Made by a program: the position numbers and the translations under genes
Notes under the pieces: model-generated
Databases searched by the model: none
What the model saw: the letters and a program-made list of their open reading frames with translations, nothing else
Told to the model about the DNA's origin: nothing
Assembly: GCA_044892505.1 (NCBI GenBank)
Contig: CM097884.1
Span: 13,516,001-13,580,000 of the forward strand
Length of the DNA stretch: 64,000 nucleotides
Direction of reading: 5' to 3'
Source: Schmidtea nova
Lineage: Eukaryota
Part shown: piece by piece, positions 59,236-62,200 of the stretch
How positions within the stretch are numbered: the stretch's first letter is position 1
Layout of the letters: each line of letters opens with the position of its first letter

Positions 59236-62200
59236 TCATTTTCTATCTTTTATTTTTGTTGACTCTGAGTTTGTAAATTGTTTGCCTCTTATAGTCATGA
59301 ATTTTAGTGATTTTAATTTGGTCAAAGGACATTCATACGAATCGACTTTATATATTACAATTGATTCTCCGGTATCACAGCTTATTTCTTTTGATGTACA
59401 GAATGGGTATGTCATCATCTTTTGTGTTACGCTATCGAAAGATGCCTTAAATTGTCTAAGTTCAACAATATATTCTCTTCTCACAACGGCATTTTTTATA
59501 GTATGTCCCCATATCTTGTATTCTCCACCTTGACAATATCCACCATGTGAAGACCATCCAACTACATCAACTCGTTGTTTTACACGTGCACCTATCTGTG
59601 CTTTTAATTCAATTTCATGTATTTTTATCTTTTTTGATTGAAATGCATGTTCACATTCTTGTGGAGTTATCGTAATAGTATCCGGTGTAAATGAGGGCCT
59701 TAAGATTGTCCGCGCTATGCTGTGACATACAAAAGCCTCTTCTGAATATCTTATTATACATTCTCTCGCTTCGGTATGTATAAAATCTGATTCCTGATAC
59801 ACATGATATAATCTAGGTTCGGTTGTAATTAAGTTAATCGGGTTCGCTTCTGGACAGTTTTCTATATCTAATAGTGAATATTTTTGTCCCCATTTCGGGT
59901 TCTGACAGTCGTATGCTATCATGCCCGTACACCCTTTTAATATACTTAATAATATTGCTATCATCACTATTATTGTGGATATGAATGATTTATGATCACT
60001 TTTCCCTGATTTCTTCATCGTTTTATCTATTATTTTCTTCAATTTTCTTTCAATTTCTTTGTCATTAGTATATTGTTGCTCTGCGTTAATCTCCATTGAT
60101 TCATCTTTTCCTCTTAAGATTTCCCATCCTCCATTTGCATGTATCCAAGGTATCACATTATTTTGTAACTTTGTAAATATCCTTTTAGCAATTTTACTTA
60201 ATTTCTTTGGTTTCATCTTCAGAACATCTTCTGATCTATAAATAAGATACGCAATTGCTGTTATAATTCTATTTTCATCAATTCCAGTAGTAAATAAAAT
60301 ATCTAAAACTTCGCCTTCATCCGCTTCTTGCTTTGTTAATCCTTTAATCTCTGACTCTATAACTTCAATTTTTTTATATATATTAATAATAAATGATGGA
60401 GATCCTGTGTGTTCATATACTTTAGGATACATGATTTTTATTAACTCTACTAGTACATCAACGTCCTTATCTTTCGTTGACGTTTTGTTTGCAATTTCTT
60501 TCAGTTTTTCAGCAATGTTATTATTCTTTAATTTTGGGAGTCTTTTTTCCTCCAACGTAAAGGTCATTATACTTCCTATAGCTCCTCTCGCGGTCTCTTC
60601 CTTATCTTCTTTGTCTAGGCTTAGTTTTGAAATTTTCTTGTTGGCTACTCCTAAACCTCTTTTTATTGAAACTGTTATGACGTTATTTTCACTGGCGTTT
60701 ATCCCATAATCCATTAAACAATCTTCGTTTTGCATCTTCATCCCAGAAAAATGCAATATTATCTCATCATTTATTCCTAGATCGGCATACCAATTTGCTC
60801 TGGCTATTTGTTTCATCTTTTTTACCTTTGTACACGCATGTACCCCTTGTTTATGGACAATTATTCTAGATGTATCTTTATCACTTGTTTCTAATGTAAT
60901 TTCTAGTGGCTCCTGTAATCTTTCATTTTTTCGAACATAATCGCTATAACATTTCAACATCTCTTTAATTTCAATTTCCAATTCAAATAATTGGGTTACT
61001 CTTTGTTTCTTTACTAATAATGGTATCAAATTTCTCAGATTCTCCAGATTTATTCCTTCCACATGAATTTTATTTAATATTCTCAAAACTTCATTATCAT
61101 CAACTAGATAATTTCTCAAAGATTCCTCTAATTCCTGTCTCAAAGTATTCTGTCTATCTAATTCTGCAAAAAACTGTTCATCTCTTTCTCTTTGCTGTCT
61201 CAACTCTTCATTATCTATCTTAACTTCATTTGTGAAAGTTTTAAATTCGTTTATCGAAACATTAATTTTATTTCTTTCGATTAATCTCTCATATTTTGTT
61301 TTAAATTCTTGTAATTCATCTCTCAGCATCTCAATTTCATTATTCGACTCTTTAACCTCCATACTATTTATTTGTTTAATTTCAGGCTCTTTCTTAAATT
61401 GAACTCTATTTGGAGATTCGACTCGTGCATTTTTACATGCTTTTGCCATATGGCCATATTTCTGACAGTTGAAGCATCTTATTTCTCCGCGAAAATTAAC
61501 TTTATCTCTCCCATCGTTACTAAACGGACTCGATCGTCTATCTCTATCAAAAGTTTGTCGAGTGGGACTCATTCTCCGTCCTCTATAATTGTTTCTATTT
61601 ATTTCGAAATTGTTTCTATTATCACTATTTCTATTTTCGGTAAATCGATTTGTTCGAGTATATTCGAAATAATTACTCCTGTTGCTTGGATTATCATTAA
61701 AACGATTATTTCTATTGTACCCACTATTTCTAAAACGACCATCTCTATTATAGTTTCCTCGACCCCTACTATCTCGATTATAATAATTATCTCTATAATT
61801 CCCCACATAAGTATTTTTATCATTAAATTCCAAATGATCATTATTTCGATTATTCGATCTGCCTCTCGGACTATTAAATCTATTGTTGTCAAAACTACGA
61901 CTCGGACTTGGACTAGTCTTTCTCCTATTTTTAACATAATTCAGATATAGCTGCTTCATCTCCTCCCAAGGAATGTTATCATCTTTATCATTTGACTTGG
62001 TTTTTTCTTTTTCAGTTTCCTGAATTTCTACTGCATCAATCACAGAACTAAATCTATCCCTCTGTATTGCTTCAATTCTTCGTGCCTTTTGTACTAACTC
62101 ATTTAAATTCTCATATTCTACCATGATCAAAGATTTGTATAAATGTTTTTGGATACCATTCCAAAATTGATCCTCAATTAGTCTTGTAGTATGTTCTCCC

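What the first reader, a model, noticed from the sequence alone, without database searches (positions are those of the whole stretch)
60112..60522. Bcl-2-family domain embedded in a retrotransposon polyprotein
Seen: BH3-like IAEKLKEIANK (60478-60516), BH1-like LFTTGIDENRIITAIAY (~60247-60297) and BH2 VIPWIHANGGWE (60118-60156), in the canonical order and with plausible spacing. A hydrophobic segment follows ~45 aa later. Known: BH2 W I..xGGW and BH1 G.NWGRIV are Bcl-2 signatures, and large DNA viruses use vBcl-2 to block apoptosis. Inference: this is a captured apoptosis modulator that may keep host cells alive during retrotransposition. NWGR is altered to DENR, so the binding groove may differ.
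Basis: partly seen in the sequence, partly recalled or inferred. Interest (0 to 1): 0.9.

Follow-up and report, generated by a model that had tools for sequence, protein, structure and literature searches.

The report
Bcl-2-like domain in flatworm-type retroelement
A young endogenous retrovirus-like element carries, in frame between its capsid and envelope genes, a diverged domain of the Bcl-2 cell-death-regulator family; this has already been noted in the giant 'Burro' elements of planarians, and its function is still untested.

Summary
The motifs are real and lie on the minus strand at the stated coordinates. They sit in a long gag-env-pol reading frame of an LTR retroelement with near-identical LTRs. 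The order is Gag (CCHC), a possible ubiquitin-like stretch, the Bcl-2-like domain, the env signal peptide, a class III fusion glycoprotein, then PR-RT-RNaseH-IN.

Several independent results support Bcl-2 homology:
- Pfam PF00452 matches at E 2e-4, but at 22 bits against a 31.4-bit cut-off.
- A PDB sequence search returns only Bcl-2 family chains at the top.
- A relative only about 25% identical in this block (P0019) has its own PF00452 hit at the same place.
- Foldseek's top 50 PDB hits are all Bcl-xL/Bcl-2, although the model is low-confidence (TM below 0.5).

In BH1 the Arg is kept and the Trp and Gly are lost. BH2 is intact.

The layout (Ubl, BCL2, in-frame mononegavirus-like env, PR) matches what is published for planarian Burro/GYPSM1 elements (PMC6431247). 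This is therefore a compact new member of a known kind, not a new class. Anti-apoptotic function is inferred, not shown. This copy has one in-frame stop, inside env.

The parts
62831..64000 (-). 5' LTR, cut by the window end (at least 1170 nt seen)
   Evidence: Direct repeat of 50367-51536, identical except for two small indels in simple runs. The inner end reads ...CA on the minus strand.
62813..62829 (-). Primer-binding-site-like sequence starting TGG, 1-2 nt after the 5' LTR
   Evidence: Read directly from the sequence. The tRNA was not identified.
53713..62631 (-). gag-(Ubl?)-Bcl-2-like-env-pol polyprotein gene. It is one reading frame of about 2,970 codons from the first ATG. It is broken once by a single in-frame stop inside env, with no frameshift.
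   Evidence: 2981 codons counted from the ORF lister's upstream TTG; one internal stop plus the terminal stop. The five closest relatives read through env as single ORFs.
61015..62631 (-). Gag-like region, including a CCHC zinc knuckle at 61429-61479
   Evidence: Pfam zf-CCHC E 1.3e-4 and a weak PNMA hit. BLASTP to the Gag parts of P0019, P0003 and P0004 gives 26-28% identity, E 1e-12 to 1e-32.
60652..60870 (-). Possible ubiquitin-like stretch (tentative)
   Evidence: The best PDB hit is a ubiquitin variant at only E 0.88, and there is no Pfam hit. Weak motif matches occur at the same relative place in P0019 and P0001. Burro has a Ubi2/SUMO-like domain just before BCL2.
60112..60516 (-). Bcl-2-like helical domain (polyprotein residues 714-848). 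The Pfam-matched BH1-BH2 core is at 60124-60312.
   Evidence: PF00452 at 22.1 bits, E 2.3e-4. PDB phmmer top hits are all Bcl-2 family, E 1e-3 to 7e-3. P0019 has the same domain at the same place. Foldseek top 50 hits are all Bcl-xL, Bcl-2 or T. suis BCL-2.
59911..59997 (-). Hydrophobic segment: the env signal peptide or signal-anchor, and the putative membrane anchor of the Bcl-2-like module
   Evidence: Kyte-Doolittle peak 2.37. It aligns with the pre-env hydrophobic segments of P0002 and P0004, which lack the Bcl-2 domain.
58027..59997 (-). env: class III (Monjiviricetes/mononegavirus-type) fusion glycoprotein with a TM anchor at 58228-58284. This gene holds the single in-frame stop.
   Evidence: PF24664 matches profile positions 3-195 (E 6.9e-17) and 258-638 (E 2.6e-68) in the same frame. 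TM anchor.
57562..57855 (-). Aspartic protease
   Evidence: Pfam RVP E 5e-9.
56389..56865 (-). Reverse transcriptase
   Evidence: Pfam RVT_1 E 1.4e-35.
55753..56139 (-). RNase H
   Evidence: Pfam RT_RNaseH and RT_RNaseH_2, E about 1e-36.
54931..55497 (-). Integrase (H2C2 zinc finger plus catalytic core)
   Evidence: Pfam Integrase_H2C2 E 7e-19 and rve E 4e-11.
53716..54378 (-). C-terminal membrane module of the polyprotein (signal-like segment, about 150 aa, TM, basic tail). It is specific to this lineage.
   Evidence: Hydrophobic segments. No Pfam hit. No similarity to relatives beyond the integrase C-terminal region.
51903..53501 (-). ORF3, 532 aa, between pol and the 3' LTR; unknown function
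   Evidence: No Pfam family, no match in relatives or elsewhere in the window, and no TM.
50367..51536 (-). 3' LTR. The part matched by the cut 5' LTR is shown; its true upstream end lies between 51537 and about 51900.

Best explanation
Shown: the region encodes a diverged Bcl-2-family-like helical domain. It is an in-frame part of the gag-env-pol polyprotein of a young Ty3/gypsy-type endogenous retrovirus of the GAG-ENV-POL kind. It lies directly upstream of the signal peptide of a class III fusion glycoprotein. The same order (Ubl, BCL2, in-frame env, PR) is published for the planarian Burro/GYPSM1 elements. This element is a compact relative of those, about 13.7 kb rather than over 30 kb. 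Inferred: during translation the env signal peptide inserts into the ER membrane and signal peptidase cuts after it. That would leave the Gag-side product, ending in the Bcl-2-like domain, on the cytosolic face, held by a C-terminal hydrophobic anchor with the topology of cellular tail-anchored Bcl-2. There it most likely binds host BH3-bearing or Bax/Bak-like death proteins and delays death of cells that express the element, as the Bcl-2 homologues of large DNA viruses do. The element's protease, or host enzymes acting at the possible ubiquitin-like stretch, would separate it from Gag. The module was acquired long ago in this lineage, not in this copy.
For: - Motifs and frame.
- Polyprotein context (zf-CCHC, PF24664, PR, RT, RH, IN in one frame).
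- LTRs identical apart from two indels, with a TGG primer-binding site.
- Pfam Bcl-2 at E 2.3e-4 over profile positions 36-100.
- PDB phmmer: about 55 distinct Bcl-2 family sequences on top, led by Trichuris suis BCL-2 (6v4m) at E 1.1e-3, with no other family at that level.
- P0019, a relative 25.6% identical in this block, has its own PF00452 hit (E 1.5e-3) about 60 residues before its env.
- The block is about as conserved between the two as Gag (26%).
- Foldseek against the PDB: the top 50 hits are all Bcl-xL, Bcl-2 or T. suis BCL-2 over 109-159 alignment columns (most 130-150). Against BFVD, named viral Bcl-2 homologues fill most of the top ranks.
- The BH2 pattern is unique in the window.
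- The hydrophobic segment is homologous to env signal peptides of relatives, with small residues at positions -1 and -3 before the conserved start of mature env.
- Published Burro architecture and the suggestion that it meddles with apoptosis: PMC6431247.
- The GAG-ENV-POL order with class III env is known in Platyhelminthes, Nematoda and Bryozoa: PMC13524379.
Against: - The Pfam score (22.1 bits) is below the curated cut-off (31.4).
- Scans of 5.8 and 1.8 billion proteins with the domain alone found nothing significant.
- The AlphaFold models are low-confidence (pLDDT 40 and 47.5), so Foldseek TM-scores stay at 0.27-0.46 and E at or above 7e-3.
- BH1 has lost the Trp and Gly of NWGR, and no BH3 motif is recognisable, so the groove may not bind BH3 ligands.
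- Four of the five env-carrying relatives retrieved lack the domain, so it is dispensable for this kind of element.
- This copy has a stop inside env.
- No expression, cleavage, localisation or binding data exist.
- Direct sequence similarity to Burro was not tested.
Confidence: 0.6

Rival explanations
1. The domain has a Bcl-2 fold but does not regulate Bax/Bak-type apoptosis. It could tether Gag to the membranes where env is made, as an assembly aid. Or it could modulate another host pathway (innate signalling, autophagy), as several poxvirus Bcl-2-fold proteins do without binding BH3 ligands (established knowledge, not tested here).
For: The BH1 NWGR motif is altered to DENR here and to a different string in P0019, and no BH3 motif is recognisable. 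The domain sits exactly between Gag and the env signal peptide. Relatives put unrelated cargo such as ankyrin repeats, an Ig domain and zinc fingers into the same polyprotein, which suggests diverse host-interaction modules.
Against: BH2 and the BH1 Arg, the residues most tied to the canonical groove, are kept. The closest matches are cellular anti-apoptotic Bcl-xL and Bcl-2, not the poxvirus-type folds. Burro elements pair BCL2 with BIR, another apoptosis-inhibitor domain.
Confidence: 0.22
2. The resemblance is a chance similarity of a helical, lysine-rich linker to the BH1-BH2 part of the Bcl-2 profile. There is no Bcl-2 fold.
For: The score is below Pfam's gathering threshold. No significant hit was found in the large protein libraries. 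The structure models have low confidence.
Against: Two sequences only about 25% identical each hit the same profile segment at the same place in the polyprotein. The top of the PDB list is exclusively Bcl-2 family. Foldseek aligns 109-159 columns (most 130-150), close to the whole bundle, to Bcl-xL. The BH2 pattern is unique in the window and absent from shuffles. A BCL2 motif at this position was found independently in Burro elements.
Confidence: 0.08
3. It is a true Bcl-2-derived passenger that no longer does anything and is decaying neutrally inside the polyprotein.
For: Four of five env-carrying relatives lack it. BH1 is degenerate and BH3 is not recognisable.
Against: The block is open and aligns end to end with P0019 at a divergence where neutral sequence would be unalignable. 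It is as conserved as Gag. An in-frame useless 135-residue block between Gag and env would be expected to be lost quickly from a replicating element.
Confidence: 0.1

Closest known systems
Burro / GYPSM1 giant gypsy-like LTR retrotransposons of planarians (Schmidtea mediterranea, Dugesia; Jurka 2007; Grohme et al. 2018; Arkhipova & Yushenova 2019, PMC6431247)
   Same: Both are LTR elements with one long ORF. Gag with CCHC knuckles is followed by a ubiquitin/SUMO-like domain, a BCL2-like motif, an env related to mononegavirus fusion glycoproteins lying in frame between gag and pol, and then PR, a dUTPase-like region, RT, RH and IN. Here the order is Gag, possible Ubl, Bcl-2-like, PF24664 env, PR, a weak dUTPase trace, RT, RH, IN. 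The window's roughly 72% A+T matches the planarian genome.
   Different: This element is about 13.7 kb, against more than 30 kb. It lacks the MATH/TRAF, BIR, Smc/AIR1 and ankyrin modules. The Ubl and dUTPase signals are not significant here. It has its own C-terminal membrane module and a separate ORF3. Sequence similarity to Burro itself was not tested, and the host is not proven.
GAG-ENV-POL 'errantiviruses' with class III (gB/G-type) env of Platyhelminthes, Nematoda and Bryozoa (PMC13524379; Sacco et al. 2022 as cited there)
   Same: Both have a Ty3/gypsy pol, a class III fusion glycoprotein placed between gag and pol, and near-identical LTRs indicating recent activity.
   Different: That survey does not mention Bcl-2 or apoptosis domains. 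Here env is fused in frame to both gag and pol.
Bcl-2 homologues of large DNA viruses (herpes-, irido-, asfar-, adeno- and poxviruses)
   Same: Both are virus-borne Bcl-2-fold proteins with degenerate BH motifs, presumed to prolong the life of the expressing cell. BFVD Foldseek ranks them on top.
   Different: Those are separate genes of DNA viruses, whereas this is a domain inside a retroelement polyprotein that borrows the env signal peptide as its anchor. The matches are weaker (E at or above 0.056) than to cellular Bcl-xL. No common descent is implied.
Cellular multi-BH Bcl-2 proteins (Bcl-xL, Bcl-2; Trichuris suis BCL-2-like A, PDB 6v4m)
   Same: They are the best sequence matches. BH1 and BH2 are collinear, with the PW-I-x3-GGW string nearly identical and the BH1 Arg kept. 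Both have a C-terminal hydrophobic segment.
   Different: About 20% identity. The Trp and Gly of NWGR are lost, BH3 and BH4 are not recognisable, the score is below Pfam's cut-off, and the domain is not a free-standing gene.

Membership tests
Bcl-2 family (Pfam PF00452) | Match to the family profile at or above the curated gathering score (31.4 bits) | tested here: not met
   22.1 bits, E 2.3e-4, profile positions 36-100; 19.9 bits on the whole ORF. Significant by E-value but below the cut-off.
Bcl-2 family (Pfam PF00452) | BH2 motif (W-x3-GGW type) | tested here: met
   WIHANGGW at 60124-60147. It aligns to the same string in T. suis BCL-2 and Bcl-xL and is unique in the window.
Bcl-2 family (Pfam PF00452) | BH1 motif (NWGR) | tested here: inconclusive
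   The aligned string is DENR. The Arg is kept and the Trp and Gly are replaced. P0019 differs again at these positions.
Bcl-2 family (Pfam PF00452) | BH3 motif on helix alpha2 | tested here: not met
The helix at the alpha2 position (about residues 730-749) has no L-x3-G/A-D motif. This is common in viral homologues.
Bcl-2 family (Pfam PF00452) | Helical bundle of about eight helices around a hydrophobic alpha5-alpha6 hairpin | tested here: inconclusive
   All-alpha, with 8-9 predicted helices in the right order. However, pLDDT is 47.5 and pTM 0.38. Foldseek's top 50 PDB hits are all Bcl-2 family with probability 0.91-1.0, but TM is 0.27-0.46 and E is 7e-3 or worse.
Bcl-2 family (Pfam PF00452) | C-terminal hydrophobic membrane anchor | tested here: met
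   A hydrophobic segment starts about 42 residues after BH2. It is the env signal peptide shared with relatives that lack the domain, so it was co-opted, not inherited with the domain.
Bcl-2 family (Pfam PF00452) | Binding of BH3 ligands or control of Bax/Bak-type death | not testable with these tools
   No biochemical or cellular data.
Burro-like planarian gypsy elements | LTR element with Gag (CCHC) and Ty3/gypsy PR-RT-RH-IN | tested here: met
Burro-like planarian gypsy elements | env related to mononegavirus fusion glycoproteins, in frame between gag and pol | tested here: met
   PF24664 in two stretches of the same frame, E 6.9e-17 and 2.6e-68.
Burro-like planarian gypsy elements | BCL2-like motif directly upstream of env, preceded by a ubiquitin/SUMO-like domain | tested here: inconclusive
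   The BCL2-like part is present. The Ubl is only hinted at: E 0.88 to a ubiquitin variant and no Pfam hit.
Burro-like planarian gypsy elements | dUTPase-like domain between PR and RT | tested here: inconclusive
   PF00692 at 13.6 bits, E 0.059, at the expected place.
Burro-like planarian gypsy elements | Giant size (over 30 kb) with MATH/TRAF, BIR, Smc and ankyrin modules | tested here: not met
   The element is about 13.7 kb (LTR spacing 12,464 nt plus one LTR) and none of these domains was found.
Burro-like planarian gypsy elements | Direct sequence similarity to Burro-1 to -4 / GYPSM1, and a planarian host | not tested
   No Burro sequence was obtained, because fetching it was left to the operators. 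The host is inferred only from about 72% A+T and the metazoan genes.

The most novel reading that the evidence does not exclude
The Ubl, Bcl-2 and env block is an old, mobile 'survive-and-enter' cassette of GAG-ENV-POL retroelements. In it, the env signal peptide doubles as the tail anchor of the Bcl-2 module. Ordinary signal-peptidase cleavage would then produce an ER-anchored death regulator without any dedicated gene. This 13.7-kb element would show the cassette in minimal form, before or without Burro-type gigantism. P0019 would show that it occurs in a second, distant lineage of unknown host.
Probability: 0.3. Interest if true: 0.6.

Novelty: new member of a known kind. Interest (0 to 1): 0.4.

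Why it matters
Bcl-2 homologues are a hallmark of large DNA viruses. Retroelements that carry one are so far known only from a brief annotation of planarian Burro elements, and nobody has tested what the domain does. A compact, young element with the same Ubl-BCL2-env-PR order, plus a second relative only about 25% identical that keeps the domain at the same place, shows two things. The module is a conserved, selected part of a retroelement lineage, not an oddity of one giant family. It also offers a simpler sequence context for asking, by structure, expression and distribution, how a reverse-transcribing element might interfere with host cell death. In planarians this touches stem-cell and tissue-turnover biology, where Burro is highly expressed when PIWI control fails (PMC8532177).

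Tried and rejected
- Domain-only searches of the 5.8-billion and 1.8-billion protein libraries gave no hit. A 20-bit match cannot reach significance there, so this says little.
- Single-sequence AlphaFold gave pLDDT 40. Adding the only homologue raised it to 47.5.
- A PDB search with whole P0019 was swamped by its ankyrin repeats and said nothing about its Bcl-2 block.
- A two-sequence profile (this element plus P0019) found no hidden Bcl-2-like block in P0001-P0004. No such block was found upstream of the degraded relative in the window either.
- Ubiquitin-like and dUTPase domains gave only non-significant traces.
- Host identification failed. There was no Rfam family and no tRNA. Exact look-up of a host transposase ORF failed. 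Cluster look-ups of relatives gave no organism beyond a mislabelled bacterial MAG.
- Grohme et al. 2018 and Sacco et al. 2022 are not held in the library, so they are cited second-hand.
- A nematode host was considered because the best PDB hit is Trichuris suis BCL-2 and nematodes have GAG-ENV-POL elements. It was rejected as unsupported: the margin over Bcl-xL is negligible.
- Programmed readthrough of the internal stop was considered and rejected. The stop lies inside the env ectodomain, and all relatives are open there.
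Full report
**Observation.** The finding lies on the minus strand. Translating 60522-60112 gives an open stretch of 137 codons that holds all three quoted strings. By my count:
- the BH2-like string is at 60121-60156;
- the BH1-like string is at 60247-60297;
- the 'BH3-like' string is at 60484-60516.

A strongly hydrophobic segment follows about 42 residues after BH2 (window 59911-59997). The BH2-type pattern occurs once in the six frames of the window and never in 200 shuffles.

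**Context.** The stretch is part of a long minus-strand reading frame.
- Pfam finds a CCHC zinc knuckle upstream.
- Directly downstream it finds a Monjiviricetes-type (class III) fusion glycoprotein, PF24664. The match is in two stretches covering profile positions 3-195 and 258-638.
- Then come aspartic protease, reverse transcriptase, RNase H and integrase.
- All of this is one frame of 2981 codons with a single internal in-frame stop and no frameshift. The stop is inside env.
- The five closest relatives in the protein library are uninterrupted there. I therefore count one break in env and none in gag, the Bcl-2-like block, or pol.

A separate ORF3 of 532 codons lies between pol and the 3' LTR. 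It has no recognisable family.

Direct repeats at 50367-51536 and 62831-64000 are the LTRs.
- The upstream one is cut by the window end.
- The two differ only by two small indels in simple runs, so the insertion is young.
- On the minus strand the 5' LTR ends in CA and is followed after 1-2 nt by a TGG-initiated primer-binding-like sequence.
- LTR spacing of 12,464 nt puts the element at about 13.7 kb.

**Is it a Bcl-2 domain?**
- On a 257-residue piece, Pfam PF00452 matches residues 782-844 of the polyprotein to profile positions 36-100 (BH1 through BH2). The score is 22.1 bits at E 2.3e-4, below the curated cut-off of 31.4 bits.
- A sequence search of all PDB chains returns about 55 distinct Bcl-2 family sequences at the top and no other family at that level. 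Best is 6v4m at E 1.1e-3, followed by many Bcl-xL entries at E 3e-3 to 1e-2. 6v4m is the Trichuris suis BCL-2-like protein A (PMC7456325).
- In those alignments BH2 is almost identical and the BH1 arginine is kept. The Trp and Gly of NWGR are replaced.
- Searches of the two very large protein libraries with the domain alone found nothing. That is expected for a 20-bit match at those database sizes.

The strongest independent support comes from a relative. A search with the env-pol part found five long polyproteins carrying PF24664 with PR (P0001-P0004 also RT, RH and IN). They are 31-44% identical and come from metagenome-type sources.
- One of them, P0019, has its own PF00452 hit (19.4 bits, E 1.5e-3, the same profile segment) about 60 residues before its env.
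- The two blocks align end to end at 22-26% identity. That is about as conserved as Gag between the same two proteins (26%).
- Two sequences this far apart hitting the same profile segment at the same place is hard to ascribe to chance or to neutral decay.
- The other four relatives lack the block.

**Structure.**
- AlphaFold2 without an alignment gave pLDDT 40.
- With P0019 as the only extra row it gave pLDDT 47.5 and pTM 0.38. The model is all-alpha with 8-9 helices.
- Foldseek against the PDB put only Bcl-xL, Bcl-2 and T. suis BCL-2 in the top 50. They aligned over 109-159 columns (most 130-150) with probability 0.91-1.0, but E was 7e-3 or worse and TM-scores were 0.27-0.46.
- Against viral predicted structures, named viral Bcl-2 homologues fill most of the top ranks, led by iridescent virus, African swine fever virus and gammaherpesviruses. 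All have E at or above 0.056.
- With such a weak model this is supportive, not conclusive.
- Three helices precede BH1. The helix at the BH3 position has no recognisable BH3 motif.

**The hydrophobic segment.** It aligns with the hydrophobic segments that precede mature env in P0002 and P0004, which have no Bcl-2 block. Small residues sit at positions -1 and -3 before the conserved start of env. It is therefore the env signal peptide, not an anchor that came with the Bcl-2 domain. This suggests the mechanism I favour, which is inference:
- The signal peptide inserts into the ER membrane and signal peptidase cuts after it.
- The upstream product then ends in a Bcl-2-like domain held on the cytosolic face by a C-terminal anchor. 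This is the topology of cellular Bcl-2.

Three further hydrophobic segments are spaced so that the protease-to-integrase part would be cytosolic and the last module would again span the membrane. They are the env anchor and two segments in the C-terminal module.

**What is known.** A review of giant transposons (PMC6431247) describes the planarian Burro/GYPSM1 elements.
- They have one huge ORF: Gag with CCHC knuckles, several host-like modules, a Ubi2/SUMO-like domain, BCL-2, an env with hits to mononegavirus fusion glycoproteins in frame between gag and pol, then PR, dUTPase-like, RT, RH and IN.
- The review credits Grohme et al. 2018 with noting the BCL2-like motif in Burro-2, -3 and -4. 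It suggests these elements meddle with apoptosis and ubiquitination.

The present element has the same order.
- A possible ubiquitin-like stretch precedes the Bcl-2 block. Its best PDB hit is a ubiquitin variant at only E 0.88, with weak motif matches at the same place in P0019 and P0001.
- A weak dUTPase trace lies between PR and RT (E 0.059).

A recent survey reports the GAG-ENV-POL order with class III env in Platyhelminthes, Nematoda and Bryozoa (PMC13524379). It does not mention Bcl-2. I found no paper linking Bcl-2 to errantiviruses or other retrotransposons.

**Host.** The window is about 72% A+T. It carries metazoan genes and transposons: an Ets domain, an IS1595/Merlin-like transposase and zf-C17orf113. 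Schmidtea mediterranea is over 70% A/T and rich in Burro elements (PMC11410931). A planarian host is likely but not proven.

**Verdict.** The domain call is right at the level of convergent sub-threshold evidence. I put Bcl-2 homology at about 0.85. The polyprotein context is certain. The function is inferred. It is a compact new member of a published kind, not a new class.

- I did not fetch the DNA of related elements or of Burro. As a result, copy-by-copy comparison, dN/dS and direct similarity to Burro were not done.
- For the tblastn, the internal stop was marked with X and no residue was put in its place.

Noticed in passing
window 36765-39332 (-): Degraded relative of the same GAG-ENV-POL kind. 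Pieces of env, protease-to-RT and integrase match at 25-48% amino-acid identity to the main element. No Bcl-2-like piece is detectable upstream of its env.
   Followed up: partly
window ~40460-44640 (+): Remnant of another Ty3/gypsy-like element: zinc-knuckle hits, and RT-RH-IN at about 30% identity. It explains the positive AT and GC skew and the higher G+C at 40-46 kb.
   Followed up: partly
window 53716-54378 (-): The last ~220 codons of the polyprotein look like a small type I membrane protein: a signal-like segment, about 150 residues, a TM and a basic tail. It has no similarity to relatives, whose tails carry other cargo (an Ig domain in P0004, IkB/Bcl-3-like ankyrin repeats in P0019, an extra Asp-protease-like domain and C2H2 fingers in P0001).
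   Followed up: partly
window 51903-53501 (-): ORF3 (532 aa) lies between pol and the 3' LTR, where canonical errantiviruses have env. It has no Pfam family, no TM segment, and no match in relatives or elsewhere in the window.
   Followed up: partly
window 56854-57576 (-): Between protease and RT there is a weak dUTPase trace (E 0.059) and a Spuma_A9PTase-like hit (E 1.5e-4). Burro has a dUTPase-like domain at the same place.
   Followed up: partly
window 46855-47826 (-); 28188-29156 (-); 35915-36658 (-): Host-side features: an ORF ending in an Ets DNA-binding domain, an IS1595/Merlin-like DDE transposase ORF, and an ORF with a zf-C17orf113 finger. They show a metazoan host but do not identify it.
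   Followed up: no
window 12100-13900 and 18600-19150: Very A+T-rich blocks (G+C about 18%) made of 9-, 12- and 22-nt periodic repeats. A shared ~90-nt unit recurs at 12508, 13694 and 18969. This is probably a short non-autonomous repeat family with microsatellite tails.
   Followed up: no
P0002 (protein library): A 2627-aa env-pol polyprotein of this retroelement kind is filed in NCBI as a protein of a Flavobacteriaceae metagenome-assembled genome (HBK71150.1). It is most likely eukaryotic contamination of that bin.
   Followed up: no
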